From Octopus sinensis (lineage: Eukaryota), in contig NC_043014.1 of the NCBI RefSeq assembly GCF_006345805.1, positions 47,120,001 through 47,184,000 of the forward strand: a stretch of 64,000 bases of DNA, read 5' to 3'. The notes beneath the pieces are model-generated. The model had not been told where the DNA came from. It did not search any database and saw only the letters and a program-made list of their open reading frames with translations. The translations under genes were made by a program, and so were the position numbers. Shown here one piece after another: positions 2,853 through 56,441 of this stretch; position 1 is the stretch's first letter, and each line of letters starts with the position of its first letter.

Positions 2853-3268
2853 TTACTCTTTTACTCTTTTACTTGTTTCAGTCATTTGACTGCGGCCATG
2901 CTGGAGCACTGCCTTTAATCAAGCAACTCGACCCCGAGACTTATTCTTTTTATAAGCCCAGTACTTATTCTATCGGTCTCTTTTGCCGAACCGCTAAGTA
3001 ACGGGGACATAAACACACCAGCATCGGTTGTCAAGCAATGCTAGGGGGAGAAACACAGACACACAAACACACACACGCATATATATATATACATATACAT
3101 ATATACGACGGGCTTCTTTCAGTTTCCGTCTACCAAATCCACTCACAAGGCTTTGGTCCGCCCGAGGCTATAGCAGAAGACACTTGCCCAAGGTGCCACA
3201 CGGTGGGACTGAACCCGGAACAATGTGGTTGGTAAGCAAGCTACTTACCATACAGCCACTCCTGTGCC
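2853..3268 (-). mobile_element. SINE family A
   Basis: Full-length reverse-complement copy. Confidence 0.85.
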
Positions 3269-3449
3269 TATTAGTGTATTAATGGTATTTATTGACCTCA
3301 GAGGAATAAACTCTTACTCTAACCTTGGTGAGATTTGAACTTAAAAACTGACAGAGATGAAAGCAAATAATTTATTGTTCAACCATCTTGTTGTTAGTTA
3401 AACCATCAACAAGTGGTGGTGGACGTGGTGGTCATGGTCATGGTCGTAA

Positions 3450-4357: not shown

Positions 4358-4641
4358 ACAATGTGAGGTATATTTGCCATCTCAATATGGCTAACCACTA
4401 AGGGTGGGTGTTACTGTAGCTTGTAGCCCCAAGAGAACATCTCCTCCAGCTGGCTTTAGGCACACTTTCTGTGCCCTTAAGGTATTTGCAAAGGAGATGA
4501 CCTCCCTTTTCAAATACCATAAGGGCACAGAAAGTGTGCCTAAAGCCAGCTGGAGACGATGTTCTCCTGGGGCCACAAGCTACAGTAACACCCACCCTTA
4601 GTGGTTAGCCATATTGAGATGGCAAATATACCTCACATTGT
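4358..4641. mobile_element. Fold-back (palindromic) element, near-perfect 284-bp hairpin
   Basis: ACAATGTGAGG...GGTATTTG pairs with CAAATACC...CCTCACATTGT about centre 4499/4500; related single arm at ~21775-21845. Confidence 0.85.
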
Positions 4642-6903: not shown

Positions 6904-7302
6904 TACTCTCTCTCTTTACTCTTTTATTTGTTTCAGTCATTTGACTGCGGCCATGCTGGAGCACCGCCTTTAATTGAGCAACTCGAACCCGGGACTTATT
7001 CTTTTGTAAGCCCAGTACTTATTCTATCGGTCTCTTTTGCCGAACTGCTAAGTGACGGGGACGTAAACACACCAGCATCGGTTGTCAAGCAATGCTAGGG
7101 GGACAAACACAGACACACACACACATATATATACATATATACGACAGGCTTCTTTCAGTTTCCGTCTACCAAATCCACTCACAAGGCTTTGGTCGGCTCG
7201 AGGCTATAGTAGAAGACACTTGCCCAAGGTGCCACGCTGTGGGACTGAACCCGGAACCATATGGTTGTTAAGCAAGCTACTTACCACACAGCCACTCCTA
7301 CG
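6904..7302 (-). mobile_element. SINE family A
   Basis: Full-length reverse-complement copy. Confidence 0.85.
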
Positions 7303-7332
7303 TCTACTGGTCAGAAGCACATAATTTCTTTA

Positions 7333-8655: not shown

Positions 8656-8731
8656 TATATAATATATATATATATATTATATTATATATATATATATAAT
8701 ATATATATATATATATGTATATATATAAATT

Positions 8732-9256
8732 TTAGAGAGTTAACCACTATGTGGATAACTCTAGTGCTAAAAATAGCCCCGATAGTATAGCCACAGAAAA
8801 AGATGTTTCCAACTAGAAGTAACATACATTTAACGGAAGGAAAGTGAAATATAACGAATAAATAGATTGACCCTGAACAAATTGTTTCATTACTAATGTA
8901 ATATGTAATTTTACTTACATACACATCTATAAATCATCAGCAGAGGTTTGTCTTAATAACTTTATAACTAAAAATGCAATTCGTTAAACCGCTCGTGTTT
9001 TTGACGCTCGGGTCGATCTAATTAATTGTATTTAAAACAAACCTCTGCTGATGATTTATAGATGTGTATGTAAGTAAAATTACATATTACATTAGTAATG
9101 AAACAATTTGTTCAGAGTCAATCTATTTATTCGTTATATTTCACTTTCCTTCCGTTAAATGTATGTTACTTCTAGTTGTAAACATCTTTTTCTGTGGCTA
9201 TACTATCGGGGCTATTTTTAGCACTAGAGTTATCCACATAGTGGTTAACTCTCTAA
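8732..9256. mobile_element. Fold-back element: 220-bp inverted arms, 85-bp spacer
   Basis: 8732-8951 is the reverse complement of 9037-9256 with 2 mismatches seen; explains the mirror ORFs 8682..8924 and 9064..9270. Confidence 0.9.
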
Positions 9257-10311
9257 TAATTTATGTATAAATTTGTATTTTCTCCGTAGTTTTTTGTGCT
9301 AAGCCACTCGGTGTTAAATTAATGGTATTATTAAATTATTATCAATTTTTCACCCTCATTTATAAATATATATATATATTCAAACTACAGCTGGTAGTGG
9401 AGAATTTTTCTATAATTTTTTGCTACCCCAAAATTTATTAATATATATATATGTATATATATATGCCCTCAAAACAAAATTCATTCTGGAAATATATATA
9501 TATGTATATATATATATTGGTGAATTGAAGAAATGGAGCTGAACGCAGTTGCTACTAAGGTATCGGTTAAACTTTTGATTAATCTACTACAAGATTATTC
9601 ATCTTTCTATTTCACATTATATATATATATATATATGTAAATGATTGCAGCATGAAAACACATATAAACCATGTCTTCAATAGCATTGGTTTCAAATTTT
9701 TGCACACGGCCAGAAATTTTAGGGTGGGGTGTAAGTTGAAAACATCAACCCCAGTGCTCAACTGGTACTTATTTTATCGACCCCCAAAAGGATGAAAGGT
9801 AATTTCAACCTCAGCAGAATTTGAACTCACAACATTAACCCATATATGCTCATAAAAAATGAAGTCTTAAAATTTCACTGTATTTAGATTAAACGCTATG
9901 GTAAGCTTTCACAATCTGGAAGAGAAGGACAGTATGCAATTATTAGCTACAGGTGTCGACTACCTACTGGACATTTCGTATGCTCCGTCAGATGTTTCCT
10001 AGCATGTTCATGTCCAAACAAGTAGGAGCAGGATTTTCATTGTAAAAATGCAACCAAGGGTATGTATGGGTTTTTTAAGATGGATGAAAGATGCCACTAA
10101 GCATTTTTCTCAGCGTGCTTATGATTCTACCAACTTGCCACCTTGTGTCTCTTCAATAATAATGATTTCAAATTTTGGCACAAAGCCAGCAATTTCAGGA
10201 GACGGGGATAAGTCAATTACAGAGGCCTCAGTATTCAACACATACTATTTTATTGATTCCAAAAGGTAAAGTTGACCTCAGTGGAATTGGAACTCAGAAC
10301 ATAAATATGGC

Positions 10312-11566: not shown

Positions 11567-11589
11567 GTAATTAATTAATTAATTAATCA

Positions 11590-11683
11590 CTTCTTCTTCT
11601 TCTTCTTTTTCTTCTTCCTCTTCTTCTTCTTTTTCTTCTTCCTCTTCTTCTTCTTTTTCTCTTCTTCTTCCTCTTCTTCTTTT

Positions 11684-11731
<48 letters not shown>

Positions 11732-11823
11732 TCTTCTTTTTCTTCTTCCTCTTCTTCTTTTTCTTCTTCCTCTTCTTCTTTTTCTTCTTCCTCTTCTTTT
11801 TCTTCTCCTCTTCCTCTTCTTCC

Positions 11824-11854
<31 letters not shown>

Positions 11855-11884
11855 TCCCTTCTTCTTCTTCTTCTTCTTCCTTTC

Positions 11885-11915
<31 letters not shown>

Positions 11916-11928
11916 TTCTTCTTCCTTT

Positions 11929-11963
<35 letters not shown>

Positions 11964-12084
11964 TTCTTCCTTTTCTTCTTCTTCTTCTTCCTTTTCTTCT
12001 TCTTCTTCTTCTTCTTCTTCTTCTTCCTCCTCTTCTTCTTCTTCTTCTTCCTCTTCTCCTTCTTCTTCTTCTTCTTCCTCTTTT

Positions 12085-12116
<32 letters not shown>

Positions 12117-12220
12117 TTCCTCCTCCTCCTCCTCCTCCTCCTCCTCCTCCTCTTCTTCTTCTTCTTCTTCTTCTTCTTCTTCTTCTTCTTCTTCTTCTTC
12201 TTCTTCTCGTCGTCGTCGTC
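11590..12220 (+). repeat. (TTC/TCC)n polypyrimidine trinucleotide tract
   Basis: About 630 bp of TTC with TCC/TTT variants, starting 23 nt after the exon 1 donor. Confidence 0.95.
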
Positions 12221-12679
12221 ATAGTTGTTGTTTGTGGTGGTGGTTTTGGGGGGTGGATTTGGCAGAACTTCGAGTACCCTGGATACATCATAATTCTGCC
12301 TGATTCCAGTTATAAAGCAACTGGGACGGTGGATGTCCTTACATTTTTGTTATTATAGTTTTTTTCTTCTTGTAGACACTTGTCGCTGAGGTAGAATCTT
12401 TCAGTTGGTCTACATCCTCTCACTTCATTGGCAATATACTGTCTCTGAAAAGGATAGTTTGACCTGGGTCCCTCTGGTTGCCTTACAGTAAATAGGCAAC
12501 TTAGGGCAGAGTAGTTTACTGTGGAACATGGCAAGAGAAGGGAGCAAAGTACATAAATAATGTTTTATTAATTTGAAGTGCAAAATGTTGGGAAAAGGCA
12601 ATGAGAAACTCCTTAAACATCATTTATAGGTAACCGTGTTTATCTTGCAGTGTCTTGTGAGAGTCATTATGCTGATATT

Positions 12680-14015: not shown

Positions 14016-14217
14016 CTAATGGGTTGCTAATGATTCTGCCAGCTCACTGCCTTAAGTGTGTGTGTGAATAATATTAGCATAATGACTGCCCCTTCGACAC
14101 AACAAAATTTGTTTCAACATATGTTCACATAAAGAAACTTGCAAACCAGATACAAAAATGAAGTGTTCATGTTACTGCAACTATCGACTCAGCTTATTGT
14201 AAACTCTGTACAATAGG

Positions 14218-14622
14218 CACAGGAGTGGCTGTGTGGTAAGTAGCTTTTTTACCAACCACATGGTTCTGGGTTCAGTCCCACTGCGTGGCACCTTGGGCAA
14301 GTGTCTTCTACTATAGTCTCGGTTCGACCAAAGCCTTGTGAGTGGATTTGGTAGACGGAAACTGAAGAGAAGCCCGTCGTATATATGTATACATATATAT
14401 ATATGTGTGTGTGTGTTTGTCCCCCTAGCATTGCTTGACAACCGATGCTGGTGTGTTTATGTCCCCGTTACTTAGCGGTTCGGCAAAAGAGACCGATAGA
14501 CTAAGTACTGGGCTTACAAAAGAATAAGTCCTGGGGGTCGAGTTGCTTGATTAAAGGCGGTGCTCCAGCATGGCCGCAGTCAAATGACTGAAACAAGTAT
14601 AAAAGAGAAAAGAGTAAAGAGT
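14218..14622 (+). mobile_element. SINE family A
   Basis: Full-length copy ending ~90 nt before exon 2. Confidence 0.85.
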
Positions 14623-15032: not shown

Positions 15033-15442
15033 GTGGCTGTGTGGTAAGTAGCTTGCTAACCAACCACATGGTTCCGGGTTCAGTCCCACTGCGTGGCATC
15101 TTGGGCAAGTGTCTTCTGCTATAGCCCCGGGCCGACCAAAGCCTTGTGAGTGGATTTGGTAGACGGAAACTGAAAGAAGCCTGTCGTATATATGTATATA
15201 TATATATATGTATGTGTGTGTCTGTGTTTGTGTGTCTGTGTTTGTTCCCCTAGCATTGCTTGACAACCGATGCTGGTGTGTTTGCGTCCCCATCACTTGG
15301 CGGTTCGGCAAAAAGAGACCGATAGAATAAGTACTGGGCTTACAAAAAGAATAAGTCCCGGGGTCGAGTTGCTCGACTAAAGGCGGTGCTCCAGCATGGC
15401 CGCAGTCAAATGACTGAAACAAGTAAAAGAGTAAAAGAGTAA
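15033..15442 (+). mobile_element. SINE family A
   Basis: Near full-length copy starting ~60 nt after exon 2. Confidence 0.85.
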
Positions 15443-24029: not shown

Positions 24030-24558
24030 TATTTTATAAGCTTAAAGTATATAAGCAATCACCGTGCAATGACTAAAAAGAGTAGTCTAATAATGAAGCA
24101 TATAAGCCCTCAACAGAAAAAAGTAAGTTTTCCTGTACGCATGGGACTCGAACCCACAATTCTTTGTTTTTGCAACAGGTGTGCTAGCCATTTACACCAA
24201 CACACAACCTTGCTTTTTGCCACTAGATTTAGGAACTATAATTACTATTATTATTATTTACAGAATTGTAAAAATTGACGCTGCTTAACAAAAACCATCG
24301 CAGTAAAAGCACATGAAAGTCTGTTTACAAAAACAACACTACAAACTAATTACAGTTCTGAAATCTGATGGAAAGAAGCAAGGTTTTACGTTGGTATAAA
24401 TGGCTAACACACTTGTCGCAAAAACAAAGAGACGGAGGTTCAAGTCCCATGTGTTTGGGAAAACCTACTTTTTCCGTTGAGGGCTTATATACCCCATTAG
24501 TAGGCTATTTTCTTTAGTCATTGCACGATGATCACTTATAAGCTTTAAGCTTATAAAA

Positions 24559-24978: not shown

Positions 24979-25166
24979 GAGCCCTGTTATTGCGGTGGGA
25001 AGCAACAAAATGTGTTTGGCCTTATATGATTTCTCTTGGAATGGCTTATTTTGTAACCTTGCTTCTGTTTCCCGGTGTCGAATCCCAAATCATCAGCTGT
25101 CGACTCCGAAGCTGGACACCGGTCATTCTAATGGCTATATTTAATTTATTTGATTTCATTGGCAAA
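24979..25166 (+). CDS. SLC29A4: ENT4/PMAT-like coding exon 6
   Basis: Acceptor ctcttatctgccag|; (R)ALLLRWE...YFVTLLLFPGVES...MAIFNLFDFIGK; donor AAA|GTAAGT; 188 nt. Confidence 0.93.
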
Positions 25167-25428
25167 GTAAGTTTCACCTATTTCTCTTTTTCTAAATAAG
25201 GTCTAACTAGAATGGCTTGATTTAATCAAGCTGAAATAGCTCAGTTGAGAAAGCATAAAACTGAAAATTTAAAGGTCCCTGATTCAGTCCCAGGATTCAG
25301 CATTCAGTGGCTGCTCTACTATATAGATGCAGGTGTGGCTGTGTGGTTAGAAGCTTGCTTCTCAACTAAATGGTTCTGGGTATACATACACACACATATG
25401 TGCACATACATCTATTTAACCATCTTGC

Positions 25429-25482
25429 ATCGTCTCTGATGAAGGGATATACATAATATCCCAGAAACAGCTGTAAGACTAT
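25429..25482 (+). ncRNA. Minimal type I hammerhead ribozyme motif (Penelope-like element type)
   Basis: GTCT-CTGATGA-A GGGATAT acata ATATCCC A-GAAA-CAGCTG-TA-AGAC: intact core, 7-bp stem II, palindromic stem III, GUA triplet, stem I closes. Confidence 0.75.
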
Positions 25483-25880
25483 ACTCTTTTACTCTTTTAA
25501 TTGTTTCAGTCATTTGACTGCGGCCATGCTGGAGCACCGCCTTTAATCGAGCAACTCGACCCCGGGTCTTATTCATTGTAAGCCCAGTACTTATTCTATC
25601 GGTCTCATTTTGCCGAACCGCTAAGTGACGGGGACATAAACACACCAGCATCGGTTGTCAAGCAATGCTAGGGGGACAAACACACACACACACATAAATA
25701 TATATATATACATATATACGATGGGCTTCTTTCCGTTTCCGTCTACCAAATCCACTCACAAGGCCTTGGTCGGCCCGAGGCTATAGTAGAAGACACTTGC
25801 CCAAGGTGCCACGCAGTGGGACTGAACCCAGAACCATGTGGTTGGTAAACAAGCTACTTACCACACAGCCACTTCTGCGC
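25483..25880 (-). mobile_element. SINE family A
   Basis: Full-length reverse-complement copy in intron 6. Confidence 0.85.
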
Positions 25881-25905
25881 CTATATCTATATCTTTTTTC
25901 CTTAT

Positions 25906-26351
25906 CTCTCTCTCTCTATCCGCTCAGTCGAATTCAACTCTCGGTCACTCGTTGGATCAGTGTCCTCCGGTCAGTTCTATCCTGGGCCGCTTCCTTCAGA
26001 CTGGCCATGTCCATTCCGGTATCACTCCTGATGGTGTCAAGCCAGCGGGTTCTTGGTCGGCCTCTTCCTCTCTTGCCACTGACCATTCCGAGCATGATGT
26101 CCTTCTCCAGGGATTTTCTCCGCATAATATGACCGAAATATACCAATCTACGCTTGGTGATCCCAGAATACCAAAAGAAGCTGTACATGTGTTTCATCGA
26201 TTACTTCAAAGCCTTTGACAGCATTGATCATGACAAGTTATGGAAATGTCTGGAGGAAATGGGAACACCTTTATACCTTGTCCAGCTTATTAGATCACTC
26301 TATCGAAACCAAGAGGCTACAGTACGGATACCATATGGCGACACTGATTGG
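25906..26351 (-). mobile_element. RTE LINE insertion with inverted 5' segment
   Basis: Minus strand GITKRRLVYFGHIMRR...GRPRTRWLD to (GA)n tail; plus strand EYQKKLYMCFIDYFKAFDSIDH RT segment; TSD TTTTTCCTTAT. Confidence 0.88.
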
Positions 26352-26638
26352 TTTTTCCTTATAAATGTCCTGTAAACTAATGCCAAAGCAGACATTGGCA
26401 CTTAGCACAGCCCTCTTGCTTATCTGTTCATGTCAGATTGTCCAATCCATGCCAGCATGGAAAAGGGGACATTTCATGATGATGATGACAATGATAGTGA
26501 TGATTTCTCCTCTCTTCCACTCATGGAAAAAATGTACTTTAAATCTTCATTGTTAAAAAAAAGGTAACATCTTTATAGAACATTTTAATTAAATTTTTAA
26601 TTGTAATTAAAAAGTAATTAAATTGTGATTACTTGCAG

Positions 26639-26879
26639 GTAATTGCTGCCATTCCTTATGACTGGCCCCGAGGTCGTCTTATCCTGTTTACTTGTTTTCG
26701 AATTCTCTTGGTTCCCATGATGATGATGTGTGTCCTGCCAGTACACAAGCCAACACTAAACGGTGAGGGATATGCTGTCTTAGCGTCTCTCTTATTGGGG
26801 GTCACCAATGGATATTTCGGCAGTGTTCCCATGATCCTGGCACCAATGAAAGTGTCCAGTGAGAAAAAGGAAATCACAG
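26639..26879 (+). CDS. SLC29A4: ENT4/PMAT-like coding exon 7
   Basis: Acceptor ttacttgcag|; VIAAIPYDW...GVTNGYFGSVPMILAPMKVSSEKKEIT(G); donor G|GTATAC; 241 nt. Confidence 0.93.
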
Positions 26880-26916
26880 GTATACTTCTCCTTCATTTCT
26901 CTCTCTTTCTCCCTTT

Positions 26917-26917
<1 letters not shown>

Positions 26918-26960
<43 letters not shown>

Positions 26961-27335
26961 GGTGGTGGTGGTGGTGGTGGTGGTAGTAGTAGTAGTGGTA
27001 GTAGTGGTGGTGGTGGTGGTGGTGGTAGTGGTGGTGGTGGTGGTGGTAGTAGTAGTAGTTGTTGTTGTTGTAGTTGTAGTTGTAGTGGTGGTGGTGGTGG
27101 TGGTGGTATAGTAGTAGTAGTTTGTTGTTGTGTTGTGGTGGTGGTGGTGGTGGTGGTGGTAGTGGTGGTGGTGGTGGTAGTAGTAGTAGTAGTTGTTGTT
27201 GTTGTAGTTGTAGTTGTAGTGGTGGTGGTGGTGGTGGTGGTAGTAGTAGTAGTTGTTGTTGTTGTTGTGGTGGTGGTGGTGGTGGTGGTGGTGGTGGTAG
27301 CAGCAGTAACAGCAGCAGCACCACCACCACCACTG
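26918..27335 (+). repeat. (AGT/GGT/TGT)n tract
   Basis: Starts ~38 nt after the exon 7 donor. Confidence 0.95.
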
Positions 27336-27823
27336 TTTTTTACGTTGTTGTTGTTTAGCCATCGGGCAGCCCTGATCCTTGAAGCCTATGATCAAGGTGT
27401 TCCATCTATGACCAACCAGGTGATAATTCAGACATAGTGTATCTAAGAGTACATTATTTAATACATCATTCCTCGTTGTTTTGTTGTTGTTCAGCCCCAG
27501 GCCAGCCTATGATCCAGGATGCTCTCACCATGGCCATTCACTCTGTTATTCAGACATAATATATCTAGGAGTACATTAGTCAATGTGCAGCCGGTAAAAG
27601 CATTTACCCATTGCCACAACTTAAGTAACAGATGAGAAAGCTACAGCTGGCCATAACACTGACCAGTGAAGTTCTTCAAATTTGAGCATTTTTAACGTTT
27701 AAGCCGCCAGCATTCAGATTACACTGTCAAATGTGATATATTTATTTATACACATTTTATAAAATTAAACCCAGGATTATTTTGTAGCTTTGATATTTTG
27801 AGACTGCATACAGCAACATACAA

Positions 27824-30616: not shown

Positions 30617-31313
30617 CACACATAATGGGTTAGAGCATATCAAAAATGCATATAATGGATGCAGGCAATTAGTATTCTGACATGATCTGATACCTAAAAT
30701 CTGGTGTCAAATGATGTGAGATGAAATCTAAGCAAACAAGAGTTTGGTATAGACAATGTTCCAGTTAAGCTAATGAAAGTGTGCTGAAATAAAAAGTGGA
30801 CATCTTGTTGTTAATGCAATCAAAACATTTATAAAATAGCTATACAGAAGTGCATATAAATATAATTAAGCAGAAAAACAGAAAAATCAGGAAGACAAAA
30901 GATCAAGGTAGGTCATTATAGACAGGTAAATATCTGGAGAGTTCATACTCTCATATTACAGGTAAAAGAGAGGCGAATCCAAGTAGTCCTATGAAGTAGT
31001 TCTTCATAAATAAGTAGATAGCCACAGGGTTCATACGCTAACCTTGCAGATAAGACACAGGGGAATATAAGTAATTCTTTACAGCTGTTTCTGGGGTTTG
31101 GTGGCCAGTAAGTGCAGTAGTGAACATTGTGTGCACATATACATGAAGTAAATTGGTGGTAGCAAATGTATATAACACAAATATAGATTGTATTATTACT
31201 CACACAATCAGTGAGTGCTTGATTGTGTTTATACTGACATCTTTATAATTATTTTATAAATGCTTGGACGCCATTAATAATGTCTGTCTATCTCTTTATA
31301 TATATATATTATA

Positions 31314-40150: not shown

Positions 40151-40665
40151 TGCAAAAACAGCCTGCAATAGTCAATAAATTAGAAATAATATTCTAAAAT
40201 TTATCCTTTCTGTACAGCCCAGTACCATATGATCCACAGTGCAGTGATCAGGGGCTCTGACTGTAGGGAACCTAGAGTAGAGGGCTAGATATTACTTGTG
40301 GAAAAGAAAAGGTATGTGGGGGAGTGAAGTGAGTTATAACTTTCAGGTTAAATTTTAAATAACCTTCCTTTCCTTGACAATCAGATGAGAATCAGTTTGT
40401 AATTAGTGTGTTTTGTTAATTACGGCTTCTGCTGCAATCTCATCTTATATCTTGAAATTTAAAATGATTTTTAATCTAATTCAAAAAACACCAAAATGAG
40501 AACGTAGCAACAGAGTACCACACAAACATAAAATTGGGGAGTTACACAAAGTGAAGTGGGGGGGGTTGCATCTGTGTGTGTGTGTGTGTGTTTATTTGTC
40601 CGTCTGTGAGTGTGTGTGTGAAACAATAACAATCCTTGGTGAACAATATTAGACAATCTTAAAAG

Positions 40666-41085
40666 GCGCAGGAGTGGCTGTGTGGTAAGTAGCTTGTTTA
40701 CCAACCACATGGTTCCGGGTTCAGTCCCACTGCATGGCACCTTGGCCAAGTGTCTTCTACTATAGCCTCGGGCCGACCAAAGCCTTGTGAGTGGATTTGG
40801 TAGATGGAAACTGAAAGAGCCCTTCGTATATATGTATATATATAATATATATGATATAGATGCGTGTGTGGTTTGTGTGTCTGTGTTTGTCCCCCTAGCA
40901 TTGCTTGACAACCGATGCTGGTGTGTTTATGTCCCCGTTACTTAGCGGTTCAGCAAAAAGAGACTGATAGAATAAGTACTGGGCTTACAAAAAGAATAAG
41001 TCCCAGGGTCGAGTTGCTCGATTAAAGGCGGTGCTCCAGCATGGCCACAGTCAAATGACTGAAACAAGTAAAAGAGTAAAAGAGA
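40666..41085 (+). mobile_element. SINE family A
   Basis: Full-length copy. Confidence 0.85.
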
Positions 41086-47804: not shown

Positions 47805-47904
47805 NNNNNNNNNNNNNNNNNNNNNNNNNNNNNNNNNNNNNNNNNNNNNNNNNNNNNNNNNNNNNNNNNNNNNNNNNNNNNNNNNNNNNNNNNNNNNNNN
47901 NNNN
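47805..47904. other. Assembly gap (100 N)
   Basis: Run of 100 N. Confidence 1.
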
Positions 47905-50909: not shown

Positions 50910-51045
50910 GTGTGTGTAGAAAATGGTGATTAGTTCATCTGTCAATGTGTCATTAAAAAAAATGACACATTTACAAACAATTTCCAAAAGTTTTCCCCCA
51001 GTTTTTCCAAGATAATGCTTCTGAAATTTTGCAACAATTATCTCT

Positions 51046-51443
51046 TTACTCTTTACTCTTTTACTTGTTTCAGTCAGTTGACTGCGGCCATGCTGGAGCA
51101 CCACCTTTAGTCGAGCAACTCGACCCCGGGACTTATTCTTTGTAAGCCCAGTACTTATTCTATCGGTCTCTTTTGCCGAACCGCTAAGTAACAGGGACAT
51201 AAACACACCAGCATCGGTTGTCAAGCAATGCTAGGGGACAAACACAGACATACAAACATACATGCACATATATATATATATATACGATGGGCTTCTTTCA
51301 GTTTCCGTCTACCAAATCCACTCACAAGGCATTGGTCGGCCCGAGGCTATAGTAGAAGACACTTGCCCAAGGTGCCACGCAGTGGGACTGAACCCGGAAC
51401 CATGTGGTTGGTAGGCAAGCTACTTACCACACAGCCACTCCTG
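51046..51443 (-). mobile_element. SINE family A
   Basis: Full-length reverse-complement copy. Confidence 0.85.
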
Positions 51444-54001: not shown

Positions 54002-55060
54002 ATATCTGTATTTAAAAATAAACGTGGTTTTTTTTTTATATTTTTAGTTTATTTTATTATCTTTCTTTTATATATATTTAAGTAAGATAAACATATTTGT
54101 TGTCATTATCGATGGCGCAGGTACTCTACTCTGTGTGTGTGTGTGTGTGTGTGCTTGTGTTTATTAGTAGCAAAAAAAGCCCTATGGAGAACTCACCCTT
54201 TTCATGGGTCCAGTGATAATAATCACAACACACACACACACACACACACACATATACTCACACATATATACACACATCCATACACACACACATACACACT
54301 GTGATATTGTGCTATATGTTATCATAATCAAATGTGATAGCCATCTGTGTCTCTCTCTCCCTCCAACCCACCCACCCAGCGCTACACCCCTCCTGGCACA
54401 CTTAAGGTTCAGCTGTTTTCTAATCTACCCTACCCTACACCCCCCCCCCCGCCATCCCACCACACCCCCCTCTTCTTTCCATCATTTAACTCCATCTTCC
54501 ACATGCTGGCAGTGCAGTGGCAGCAGCTGTAGTGGCGGTGGCGGCGGCGGTGGTGATGGTGGTGGTGGCGGTGGCGGGGCTGGTGGTGGTGGTGGTGGTG
54601 TTGACAGCGACAGGGTGTAGCGAGTGTAGTCACAGCAGCACCGCATCATCATCTTCTTAACGAGATAGGTGGAGGCAACGATGCAGAAAAAAAAAAAAAC
54701 CACACTGAAATAGAAGAAGGGCAAGACTCAGTAACACCATCTCTCCCTCAGTCTGTGATGTTGTGGCATTCATCTCGAGCAACATGTCTTTAAAGTGATG
54801 CAAACAGGGCCTAAATTTCCCTTAGTTTAAGAAGACGTCCTGACACCGAAGCGTTGCCAACGTCACACTGCTGCAACCGAGATTTGAACCGTTTAAGTAA
54901 TTAGGGGTATCAAGGGATATTCATGTCAGAAATTAGTAAACCATACTTTAAACCGTACTTTAAATTGTACTTTAAAACACCTCAGTTCGTTTGATGAGAG
55001 GAAATTCTATATTATGGTGGCAACCCATTCCACACCTAGTGAACCCTGTGTATAATTAGC

Positions 55061-55272
55061 ATTGCCATGGTAACTCAAAAACATGGAGAGTTTCTTCTTC
55101 TTCTTCTTCTTCTTCTTGAACTTCCCCATCATCATCATCATCATCATTAGCATCATCTCCATCAACCTCCTCCTCCTTTTCATCCTCATCCTCTTCTTTT
55201 TCTTCTTCTCCTTTTTCTTCTTCCTCCTCTTCCTCCTTTTTCTCCTCCTCATCGTCGTCGTCGTCGTCGTCG

Positions 55273-55333
<61 letters not shown>

Positions 55334-56441
55334 TATCATTGTCATCAGCATCCATCATCACAATTGCCGCTGCCACTGCCACCACCACAACCACCACCAC
55401 CACCACCACCACCACCACCACCATTGCCACTTCTACCATAGAATTTACAACTAAATAGCGAAGTCTAGAACCTGCTTCTCTGAGCACACCACCACCAGTA
55501 ACAGCAACAACGACAACAACAACAACAATGGTATACTAAGTACAAAATGATGTGATGTCACCAAGAGTTTGTCCTTCCGAACTTCTGGTCGCTGCCATCG
55601 TTGTCATGGTAACAGTTTGGCAGAATGTTCTGCTTCTTCAAGTGTTTATTACATCCTGTGTATGTGTGCATGTGTGTGTGTGTGGTGTGTGTGGTGTGTG
55701 TCTCCAGCTATTTTCATTGTAATAGCAATCGTCATCATCATTGTCCTAATAGCTGTCATCATCATTGTTGTCGTTGCCTTGTTGTCATCTTTCCCACCAC
55801 CACCACCACACCACCACACCACCACACACCACACCACCACACCACTACCACCACCAACAAACCACCAACAAACCATCACCACCACCACCAAACCACCACT
55901 ACCATCACCACCACCACCATCACCACCACCACTACCATCACCACCACCACCAAACCACCATCACCGCCAAACCACCACCACCAAACCACCACCACCACCA
56001 CCACCATCACCACCACCACCACCAAACCACCACCACCACTACCATCACCACCACCACCATCACCACCACCACTAAACCACCATCACCACCACCACCACCA
56101 CTACCATCACCACCACCACCAAACCACCATCACCGCCAAACCACCACCACCAAACCACCACTACCACCACCACCACTACCATCACCACCACCACCATCAC
56201 CACCACCACTAAACCACCATCACCACCACCACCACCACCACCACTACCATCACCACCACTGTAACAGCCATCATCATCATCATCATCATCTAAACAAGCT
56301 ATAATTGAAGCACCGCATCTTAACTCCTAACCCAGCTCTCAACCACTCAACCACAATTAACGATGACGACCACCACCACCACGACCACCACTACCCTACC
56401 ATTAAAATGTAAATGGATCTTCAGTCAGTTTCCATGGTGAC
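55061..56441. promoter_or_regulatory. Cluster of three RFX X-box-like palindromes
   Basis: ATTGCCATGGTAAC 55061-55074, GTTGTCATGGTAAC 55600-55613, GTTTCCATGGTGAC 56428-56441. Confidence 0.45.
55795..56290 (+). repeat. (CCA)n/(CAT)n tract
   Basis: ACC repeats with AAA/ATC/ACT variants. Confidence 0.95.

What the first reader, a model, noticed from the sequence alone, without database searches (positions are those of the whole stretch)
25429..25482. Hammerhead ribozyme in sense orientation inside ENT4 intron 6
Seen: CTGATGA (25436-42); stem II GGGATAT/ATATCCC (25444-50/25456-62); GAAA (25464-67); self-complementary stem III ACAGCTGT (25467-74); cleavage triplet GUA (cut after 25475); stem I GTCT/AGAC extended by two more pairs after one mismatch. 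Established: Penelope-like retroelements carry minimal type I hammerheads with palindromic stem III that work as dimers. Inference: it lies 270 nt past the exon 6 donor on the transcribed strand, so it could cut the pre-mRNA co-transcriptionally and compete with splicing, as intronic ribozymes such as CPEB3 can. Caveats: an A-A mismatch closes stem II, and a lone minimal copy may need a partner in trans.
Basis: partly seen in the sequence, partly recalled or inferred. Interest (0 to 1): 0.85.

Follow-up and report, generated by a model that had tools for sequence, protein, structure and literature searches.

The report
Solitary minimal hammerhead motif in intron
A real hammerhead-ribozyme-shaped sequence of the small retrotransposon-borne kind sits alone, in the sense direction, in an intron of an octopus nucleoside-transporter gene; it is most likely a left-over from a mobile element, not a working switch that cuts the gene's RNA.

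Summary
The motif is not chance: permuted-core decoys on the real window gave 0.07 hits on average against 4 for the true core, and only 1 of 539 decoys gave a hit as good as this one.

It lies 270 nt into a 1,472-nt intron (25167-26638) of a + strand ENT-family gene, which looks ENT4-like. It matches the Penelope-type minimal hammerhead:
- helix II of 7 bp and helix I of 4 bp
- an extra A after A9
- a G-C pair at 10.1/11.1
- a palindromic helix III (ACAGCUGU)
- a position directly after a microsatellite

One departure is an unpaired A (25463) before G12; the same letters can be read as an A·A mismatch at the base of helix II.

It is a single copy in unique sequence. A SINE inserted later, 6 nt past the cut site. 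No Penelope reading frame adjoins it, there is no partner copy, and helix III is predicted to form in only about 1% of monomers.

Rfam misses it, but Rfam also misses a textbook minimal hammerhead in a control locus.

Verdict: a new member of a known, very abundant kind, probably an inert relic. Cleavage of the pre-mRNA is unsupported. I could not test conservation across Octopus species.

The parts
25429..25435 (+). Helix I, 5' strand: A25429 and U25430, the C25431 mismatch, then GUCU 25432-35
   Evidence: sequence. The 4 contiguous pairs with AGAC 25476-79 have predicted probability 0.86-0.88.
25436..25442 (+). Core box CUGAUGA (C3 to A9)
25443..25443 (+). Unpaired A between A9 and helix II. 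This is the extra nucleotide typical of Penelope-type minimal hammerheads; alternatively it is the 5' half of an A·A mismatch.
   Evidence: The feature is described in PMC4209133.
25444..25462 (+). Helix II: GGGAUAU / AUAUCCC, 7 bp starting with G-C, closed by the loop ACAUA
   Evidence: pair probability 0.99.
25463..25463 (+). Unpaired A between helix II and G12. This is the one departure from the family pattern.
   Evidence: descriptor register e5=1, e3=1.
25464..25467 (+). Core box GAAA (G12, A13, A14, A15.1)
25467..25474 (+). Helix III: the 8-nt palindrome ACAGCUGU. In one molecule it gives 2 bp plus the tetraloop AGCU; between two molecules it gives an 8-bp duplex.
   Evidence: monomer pair probability about 0.01; self-duplex -11.1 kcal/mol; the dimer's minimum-energy fold uses it.
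25475..25476 (+). Predicted cleavage site: after A25475 (H17 of the triplet GUA)
   Evidence: Follows from the hammerhead numbering applied to the sequence. Not tested experimentally.
25476..25482 (+). Helix I, 3' strand: AGAC, the U mismatch, then A and U. The last bases lie on the SINE junction and its target-site duplication.
25381..25415 (.). (CA/TA)n microsatellite directly upstream of the motif-bearing unique segment (25416-25481)
   Evidence: Penelope-like elements insert preferentially at microsatellites (PMC8557442).
25482..25882 (-). Full copy of an abundant ~400-bp SINE, antisense to the gene, inserted 6 nt past the cut site. CTATA is present at both junctions (25479-83 and 25881-85) and is a likely target-site duplication.
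   Evidence: at least 12 copies in the window at 83-94% identity. The same SINE is in O. vulgaris at 93.5%.
25167..26638 (+). The host intron of the ENT-family gene. The upstream exon ends at 25166 and the downstream exon starts at 26639.

Best explanation
It is a solitary minimal type-I hammerhead motif of the kind carried by Penelope-like retroelements and their non-autonomous relatives. It was left in the intron as a short fragment inserted at a microsatellite, and a SINE later landed just beside it.

In the parent element such motifs work in pairs. The palindromic helix III of two copies pairs into a double hammerhead that cuts after the GUA/GUC triplet and so processes multimeric element transcripts.

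Here the copy is alone, and it carries an unpaired A next to G12. It most likely stays uncut and has no effect on the transporter's pre-mRNA.

Shown: the motif, its non-random nature, its fit to the family architecture, its genomic setting, and the existence of textbook motifs of this kind in Octopus DNA.

Inferred: the retroelement origin and the inactivity.
For: 1. All core letters and helices are present, far above chance.

2. It fits features that Cervera & de la Pena list as emerging beyond their search descriptor (PMC4209133):
- helix II of 7-8 bp (here 7)
- helix I of 4-5 bp (here 4)
- a nucleotide between A9 and 10.1 (A25443)
- a G10.1-C11.1 pair (G25444-C25462)
- a palindromic 15.2-16.2 and loop 3 (CAGCUG)

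3. Microsatellite lies on both sides once the SINE is removed. Penelope-like elements favour microsatellite targets (PMC8557442).

4. Octopus DNA holds textbook motifs of this kind:
- L013 C3 17997 (O. vulgaris), CUGAUGA-A-GGCUGG..CAGCC-GAAA-UGU-U, lies 10 nt after an (AAT)n tract.
- Another lies in a mollusc ENT locus at L001 10879-10907.
- The window holds two more hammerhead-like motifs in a head-to-head inverted repeat beside (TA)n. This arrangement is described for Penelope insertions.

5. For inactivity:
- In the monomer, helix III has probability about 0.01 and the core is sequestered with probability 0.87.
- There is no second copy in the window.
- Single minimal motifs are inactive and dimers weak in vitro (PMC4209133).
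- Retrozymes are depleted from introns.
Against: - No Penelope reading frame or pseudo-LTR is recognisable next to it.
- The fragment is only about 66 nt.
- No related copy was found in the window or in 81 kb of O. vulgaris, so family membership rests on architecture alone.
- The unpaired A25463 is not part of the published pattern.
- Inactivity is predicted, not measured. A U·U mismatch at the same place is tolerated in axolotl hammerheads (PMC7229834), and a helix III of 2 bp plus a tetraloop is normal for invertebrate type-I hammerheads.
Confidence: 0.72

Rival explanations
1. It is a working cis-acting intronic ribozyme. It cuts the ENT pre-mRNA after A25475, alone or by pairing with a second transcript, and so lowers or tunes the output of spliced mRNA, as proposed for CPEB3-type and HH9/HH10-type intronic ribozymes.
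For: - It is in sense orientation inside the intron.
- The core is complete.
- A mismatch at the base of helix II is compatible with cleavage in axolotl HHR_Amex2 (PMC7229834).
- The helix III palindrome can dimerise (-11.1 kcal/mol).
Against: - The predicted monomer does not form helix III and pairs the core away.
- There are no loop-loop tertiary elements.
- There is no partner copy in the transcript.
- Lone minimal motifs are inactive in vitro (PMC4209133).
- There is no match to Rfam HH9, HH10 or any other hammerhead model. That test is weak, as one search shows.
- Conservation is untested.
Confidence: 0.07
2. It is a chance combination of the two short boxes with a TA-rich hairpin thrown up by microsatellite-like sequence.
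For: - Helix II is built around ATATACATAATAT, which resembles the many (TA)n tracts of the window.
- One of 539 decoy descriptors also reached this quality.
- Rfam gives no hit.
Against: - Expectation is about 0.002-0.005 per window at this quality.
- The true core gives 4 loci against 0.07 for decoys.
- The extra features not demanded by the descriptor (U7, the A after A9, the G-C at 10.1/11.1, the helix lengths, the palindromic loop 3) all match the family.
- Real motifs of this class occur at roughly one per 50-80 kb in the Octopus DNA sampled.
Confidence: 0.08
3. It is the 3' part of a tRNA-derived SINE-like retroposon that carries its own hammerhead, like the Sm-alpha elements of Schistosoma. 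The element would start at the tRNA-like segment 25230-25302.
For: - A tRNA-like sequence (Rfam tRNA, 37.6 bits) lies 127 nt upstream on the same strand.
- Hammerhead-bearing SINE-like elements are known (PMC6765202).
Against: - Between the two lie a fragment of a different SINE's head (25321-25381) and a microsatellite. The stretch therefore looks composite.
- Neither the tRNA-like part nor the motif has another copy in the window or in 81 kb of O. vulgaris.
Confidence: 0.06

Closest known systems
Minimal hammerheads of Penelope-like elements (Cervera & de la Pena 2014, PMC4209133; shown to act as dimers by Lunse, Weinberg & Breaker, cited in PMC6765202)
   Same: - Type-I topology with an open, short helix I (4 bp)
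- Long helix II (7 bp)
- An extra nucleotide after A9
- G-C as the first helix II pair
- A palindromic helix III that can only be stable in a dimer
- Occurrence as a lone copy next to a microsatellite
   Different: - An additional unpaired A between helix II and G12
- Helix III carries a 4-nt palindromic insert (AGCU) rather than none or 2 nt
- No Penelope pseudo-LTR or reading frame nearby, and no second copy
Axolotl retrozyme hammerhead HHR_Amex2 (PMC7229834)
   Same: - A homo-mismatch at the base of helix II (U·U there, A·A here)
- Helix III of 2 bp capped by a palindromic tetraloop
- Works much better as a dimer
   Different: - Amex2 has closed loops 1 and 2 with tertiary contacts, and sits in 350-bp tandem repeats with tens of thousands of copies.
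- Here there are no tandem repeats and no loop 1.
Double-hammerhead RNAs of newt satellite 2 and avocado sunblotch viroid (Forster et al. 1988, cited in PMC6765202)
   Same: A weak helix III makes single copies inactive. Two copies pair through helix III.
   Different: Those RNAs are made as multimers, so a partner is always present. This copy is single within a pre-mRNA.
Conserved intronic ribozymes (hammerheads HH9/HH10 of amniotes; the CPEB3 HDV-like ribozyme)
   Same: A self-cleaving-ribozyme motif on the sense strand of an intron.
   Different: Those are stable monomers conserved over long evolutionary distances, and Rfam models recognise them. Here the monomer fold is unfavourable, conservation is unknown and there is no Rfam hit.

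Membership tests
Hammerhead ribozyme (core definition) | Conserved core C3 U4 G5 A6 N7 G8 A9, G12 A13 A14, the A15.1-U16.1 pair, and H17 not G | tested here: met
   CUGAUGA 25436-42, GAAA 25464-67, U25474, A25475.
Hammerhead ribozyme (core definition) | Three helices radiating from the core | tested here: met
   Helix I has 4 bp and helix II has 7 bp. Helix III is only 2 bp plus a tetraloop in one molecule (probability about 0.01), or 8 bp in a dimer.
Hammerhead ribozyme (core definition) | A Watson-Crick 10.1-11.1 pair directly adjoining A9 and G12 | tested here: not met
   The letters read either as A25443·A25463, or as G25444-C25462 with an unpaired A on each side. A U·U exception is known in an active axolotl family (PMC7229834).
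Hammerhead ribozyme (core definition) | Match to the Rfam hammerhead covariance models | tested here: inconclusive
   There is no hammerhead hit at E<=10 on 211 nt. The same search also misses a textbook minimal hammerhead at L001 10879-10907, so the models do not cover this subclass.
Hammerhead ribozyme (core definition) | Site-specific self-cleavage | not testable with these tools
   This needs in vitro transcription or RNA-end mapping.
Penelope-type minimal hammerhead | Helix II of 6-8 bp and an open helix I of 4-5 bp | tested here: met
   7 bp and 4 bp. The criteria come from PMC4209133.
Penelope-type minimal hammerhead | An extra nucleotide between A9 and 10.1, followed by G10.1-C11.1 adjoining G12 | tested here: inconclusive
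   A25443 and G25444-C25462 fit, but A25463 intervenes before G12. One substitution or one insertion would explain this; alternatively it is a family trait. Two other Octopus motifs show a U..U pair at the same place.
Penelope-type minimal hammerhead | Palindromic 15.2-16.2 and loop 3 | tested here: met
   CAGCUG lies within ACAGCUGU.
Penelope-type minimal hammerhead | Lies in the pseudo-LTR of a Penelope-like element, or has a second copy in tandem or nearby | tested here: not met
   The segment is unique in the window. Neighbouring reverse-transcriptase pieces are LINE-like. Most published motifs are likewise solitary.
Penelope-type minimal hammerhead | Belongs to a genome-wide consensus family with covarying helices | not testable with these tools
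   No Octopus genome can be searched by DNA here. There is no copy in 81 kb of O. vulgaris and none in metagenome contigs.
Non-LTR retrozyme | Tandem repeats of about 170-400 bp, each with a type-I hammerhead | tested here: not met
   There is no tandem or dispersed copy.
Conserved intronic hammerheads (HH9/HH10 type) | A stable monomer with loop-loop contacts, conserved in orthologous introns | tested here: not met
   The monomer fold is unfavourable and there is no Rfam hit. Conservation could not be tested: the only related locus shares just an exon at 76% identity.

The most novel reading that the evidence does not exclude
Octopus genomes may carry a distinct subclass of minimal hammerhead in which a homo-mismatch (A·A or U·U) is interposed between the catalytic core and helix II. 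It is seen here in three independent motifs: this one, the inverted-repeat pair at 8.9-9.1 kb, and L013 C3 9087. The sense copy in the ENT4-like intron might then be an active, dimer-dependent or chaperone-dependent cutter of the pre-mRNA.
Probability: 0.06. Interest if true: 0.6.

Novelty: new member of a known kind. Interest (0 to 1): 0.3.

Why it matters
If it is only a relic, it adds one more example to the thousands of retroelement-borne minimal hammerheads already catalogued in invertebrates. It also shows that they occur in Octopus beside microsatellites.

It would matter more if it were active. A sense-strand ribozyme in an intron could sever a transporter pre-mRNA. A core-proximal A·A or U·U pair would then widen the known sequence rules of the hammerhead.

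A practical point: the Rfam hammerhead models miss this whole subclass. Genome annotations that rely on them undercount such motifs.

Tried and rejected
- **Rfam.** At gathering threshold on the whole window it finds only a tRNA-like hit. At E<=10 on 211 nt it gives no hammerhead. At E<=5 on the whole window the 150 best of 238 matches listed are almost all microsatellite-driven miRNA-model matches, with no hammerhead among them. The control showed these negatives say little.\n- **Orthologous intron.** The only related contig (L001) shares just one exon at 76% nucleotide identity and does not reach exon 6. Five exact-product look-ups of window reading frames, including the antisense frame that spans the motif, found nothing. 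A protein search with exons 6+7 returned only relatives at 53-63% identity.\n- **Pattern scans.** Viral contigs gave 10 box-only chance matches. Metagenome contigs gave none.\n- **The 17-nt exact match at 31079-31095.** It has no flanking similarity.\n- **Apparent similarity of inverted-repeat arm A to L001.** It dissolved on alignment.\n- **Tail similarity between this motif's downstream flank and arm A.** 26 of 37 positions match, p about 0.05 by shuffling. This is too weak to use.\n- **Penelope origin of the reverse-transcriptase fragment at 26154-26375.** Rejected. It matches only the general Pfam reverse-transcriptase model RVT_1. On my reading its motifs, and the C-terminal piece on the other strand (25934-26197), are LINE-type. 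No Penelope-specific model was run.\n- **The paper by Lunse et al. (PMC5785218).** It is not held.

Full report
**What is in the sequence.** The + strand at 25429-25482 reads AU-C-GUCU CUGAUGA A GGGAUAU ACAUA AUAUCCC A GAAA CAGCUGU A AGAC-U-AU.
- the CUGAUGA box (25436-42)
- a 7-bp helix II (25444-50 / 25456-62)
- GAAA (25464-67)
- the self-complementary ACAGCUGU (25467-74)
- the GUA triplet, with the predicted cut after 25475
- a 4-bp helix I (GUCU/AGAC) that can add two A-U pairs beyond a C·U mismatch

It allows any N7, an optional unpaired base on either side of helix II, a palindromic or hairpin helix III, and helix I of at least 4 bp.
- On dinucleotide shuffles (global and in 200-nt blocks) it expects 0.003-0.013 hits per window for motifs weaker than this one. 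It gave none at the observed quality in 1,500 shuffles.
- Real DNA has more hairpins than shuffles, so I also ran 539 decoy descriptors with permuted core boxes on the unshuffled window. They gave 0.069 loci on average (maximum 2), against 4 loci (3 independent) for the true core. One decoy in 539 reached the quality of this motif.
- The two boxes alone are chance matches. The pattern CTGATGA..GAAACAGCTGTA occurs 10 times in viral contigs, never with helices.

The motif is real in the statistical sense.

**Setting.**
- The gene is on the + strand and belongs to the equilibrative nucleoside transporter family (Pfam Nucleoside_tran, 2.5e-18).
- The exon before the motif ends at 25166 (AAA|GTAAGT) and the next starts at 26639 (TTGCAG|GTA). 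The intron is therefore 25167-26638, and CUGAUGA begins 270 nt into it.
- A rough probe, human ENT4 written from memory, aligns at 43-88% identity to eight successive + strand segments. It places the upstream exon as the sixth coding exon if the unconserved loop exon near 23.1-23.4 kb is counted. 'ENT4 intron 6' is therefore plausible, though it rests partly on recalled sequence.
- From 5' to 3' the intron holds:
  - a tRNA-like segment at 25230-25302
  - a 61-nt fragment of the head of an abundant SINE at 25321-25381
  - a (CA/TA)n tract at 25381-25415
  - a unique 66-nt segment carrying the motif
  - a complete ~400-bp copy of the same SINE in antisense at 25482-25882
  - LINE-type reverse-transcriptase fragments on both strands
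- The SINE has at least 12 copies in the window (83-94% identity). It occurs at 93.5% identity in Octopus vulgaris chromosomes, which places the window in the genus Octopus.
- CTATA is present at both SINE junctions. Before the SINE arrived, the motif was therefore followed by TATATCTATATC(T)n, which means it sat in microsatellite on both sides.

**What kind of hammerhead is it?** Cervera and de la Pena (PMC4209133) describe the minimal hammerheads of Penelope-like elements as follows:
- helix II of 7-8 bp
- helix I of 4-5 bp with no defined loop 1
- a nucleotide inserted between A9 and 10.1
- a conserved G10.1-C11.1 pair
- a palindromic 15.2-16.2 (plus loop 3 when present)
- mostly solitary copies

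Read with A25443 as the inserted nucleotide, this motif meets all of these: G25444-C25462, 7 bp, 4 bp, CAGCUG. Penelope-like elements also prefer microsatellite targets and often leave inverted 5'-truncated copies (PMC8557442).

The single departure is A25463, an unpaired base between C11.1 and G12. The same letters can be read as an A·A mismatch at the base of an 8-position helix II. One substitution or one insertion separates the motif from the canonical form, as expected of a decaying copy. The feature is not unprecedented. The axolotl family HHR_Amex2 (about 60,000 copies) has a U·U mismatch at the base of helix II and a helix III of 2 bp plus a tetraloop. It cleaves 22% in one hour as a monomer and much better as a dimer (PMC7229834).

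**Why the Rfam negative does not count.** No hammerhead model reports this motif, even at E<=10 on 211 nt. The same search on L001 10790-11000 also finds nothing. That stretch contains a textbook minimal hammerhead: UUCUU CUGACGA U GACC AAA GGUC GAAA CUAGU A GAGAA. The curated models do not cover this subclass.

**Are such motifs present in Octopus?** Yes.
- In 81 kb of O. vulgaris DNA fetched through SINE-derived annotated proteins, the descriptor finds 2 loci against 0.106 for decoys.
- One, L013 C3 17997, is canonical: AAUAC CUGAUGA A GGCUGG..CAGCC GAAA UGU U GUGUU. It lies 10 nt after an (AAT)n tract.
- In the window itself, two further motifs (C3 at 9048 on + and at 8940 on -) sit at the inner ends of a 230-nt, 98% inverted repeat beside (TA)n. 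This is the head-to-head arrangement described for Penelope insertions.
- These two motifs, and L013 C3 9087, also carry an unpaired U on each side of helix II. The 'mismatch at the base of helix II' may therefore be recurrent in Octopus, but three cases cannot prove it.

**Does it work here?** Prediction says no, at least not alone.
- In the monomer ensemble helix II is solid (0.99) and helix I likely (0.86-0.88).
- Helix III forms with probability about 0.01.
- C3-U4-G5 pairs instead with the CAG of helix III (0.87), which is an inactive fold.
- Two molecules can form the 8-bp helix III (-11.1 kcal/mol), but there is no second copy in the window. The other hammerhead-like motifs have different palindromes.
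- Published tests found no detectable cleavage for a single minimal motif, and only weak, high-Mg2+ cleavage for dimers (review PMC6765202).
- Hammerhead-bearing retrozymes are depleted from introns in Xenopus. This fits selection against active sense copies.

Cutting of the pre-mRNA in competition with splicing is therefore an untested idea with the available evidence against it.

**What could not be done.**
- The only related locus I could fetch shares one exon at 76% nucleotide identity and has unalignable introns.
- The window's reading frames are not on record.
- No tool here searches an Octopus genome by DNA.
- Family membership therefore rests on architecture, setting and the presence of sister motifs, not on homologous copies.

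**Verdict.** This is a genuine minimal hammerhead motif of the retroelement-borne kind. It is solitary, sense-oriented, in an intron of an ENT4-like gene, and most likely an inert relic (confidence about 0.7). Rivals: an active intronic ribozyme (about 0.07), chance (about 0.08), and part of a tRNA-headed SINE-like unit (about 0.06). It is a new member of a known and abundant kind; interest is modest.

Noticed in passing
window 8727-8956 and 9032-9261: A 230-nt inverted repeat (98% complementary, 75-nt spacer) beside a (TA)n tract. Each arm carries a hammerhead-like motif near its inner end (C3 at 8940 on - and at 9048 on +). Each motif has helix I of 5 bp, a long imperfect helix II with an unpaired U on each side, and helix III ACAAUUUGU. 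The layout resembles the head-to-head 5'-truncated copies described for Penelope-like elements.
   Followed up: partly
L013 17992-18037 (Octopus vulgaris OX597820.1) and L001 10879-10907 (-): Textbook Penelope-type minimal hammerheads. Each lies within about 60 nt of a microsatellite. Rfam misses the L001 one even at E<=10.
   Followed up: partly
window 25321-25381 and 25826-25886: A SINE head fragment and the head of the antisense SINE form a 61-nt, 82% inverted repeat that brackets the motif (444-nt loop). In the pre-mRNA this could make a long imperfect duplex of the sort RNA-editing enzymes act on.
   Followed up: no
window 31079-31095: The + strand here is the exact reverse complement of 25460-25476 (CCCAGAAACAGCUGUAA, 17 nt). 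This covers the 3' half of the motif and lies about 1.2 kb past the last mapped coding exon. There is no flanking similarity. The expectation for such a match is about 3e-4 to 1e-3. It is unexplained.
   Followed up: partly
window 25009-25102 (-): A relaxed hammerhead-descriptor hit on the antisense strand of coding exon 6. It has GU-rich helices and a 40-nt loop 2. Most likely chance.
   Followed up: partly
window 25230-25302 (+) and 24132-24207 (-): Two tRNA-like sequences. The first is a Phe(GAA)-like one in the intron (Rfam 37.6 bits, five non-standard pairs). The second is a tRNA-Leu(CAA) called by ARAGORN just upstream of exon 6 (Rfam 28.5 bits, just under the cut-off). They could be genes, pseudogenes or SINE heads.
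   Followed up: no
window, e.g. 2854-3271, 6910-7306, 14213-14616, 15033-15441, 25482-25882, 40664-41084, 51044-51443: An abundant ~400-bp SINE with a tRNA-related head, an internal (TG/TA)n tract and a (TACTCTTT)n-type tail. The window holds at least 12 copies at 83-94% identity. It also occurs in O. vulgaris, where some copies are annotated as hypothetical proteins.
   Followed up: partly
window 25934-26197 (-) and 26154-26375 (+): Two LINE-type reverse-transcriptase fragments on opposite strands in the same intron. One matches RVT_1 at 1.1e-07; the other looks like a LINE C-terminal region. They are not Penelope-type.
   Followed up: partly
window 4358-4494 and 4505-4641: A near-perfect hairpin: 137-nt arms, 96% complementary, 10-nt loop. 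Not repeated elsewhere that I saw.
   Followed up: no
window 47805-47904; 11579-12355; 26859-27437; 55010-56330: A 100-N assembly gap, and three long low-complexity tracts (purine/pyrimidine-rich and triplet-like runs). One starts just after exon 7. Microsatellites across the window also produce many false sub-threshold miRNA-model matches in Rfam.
   Followed up: no
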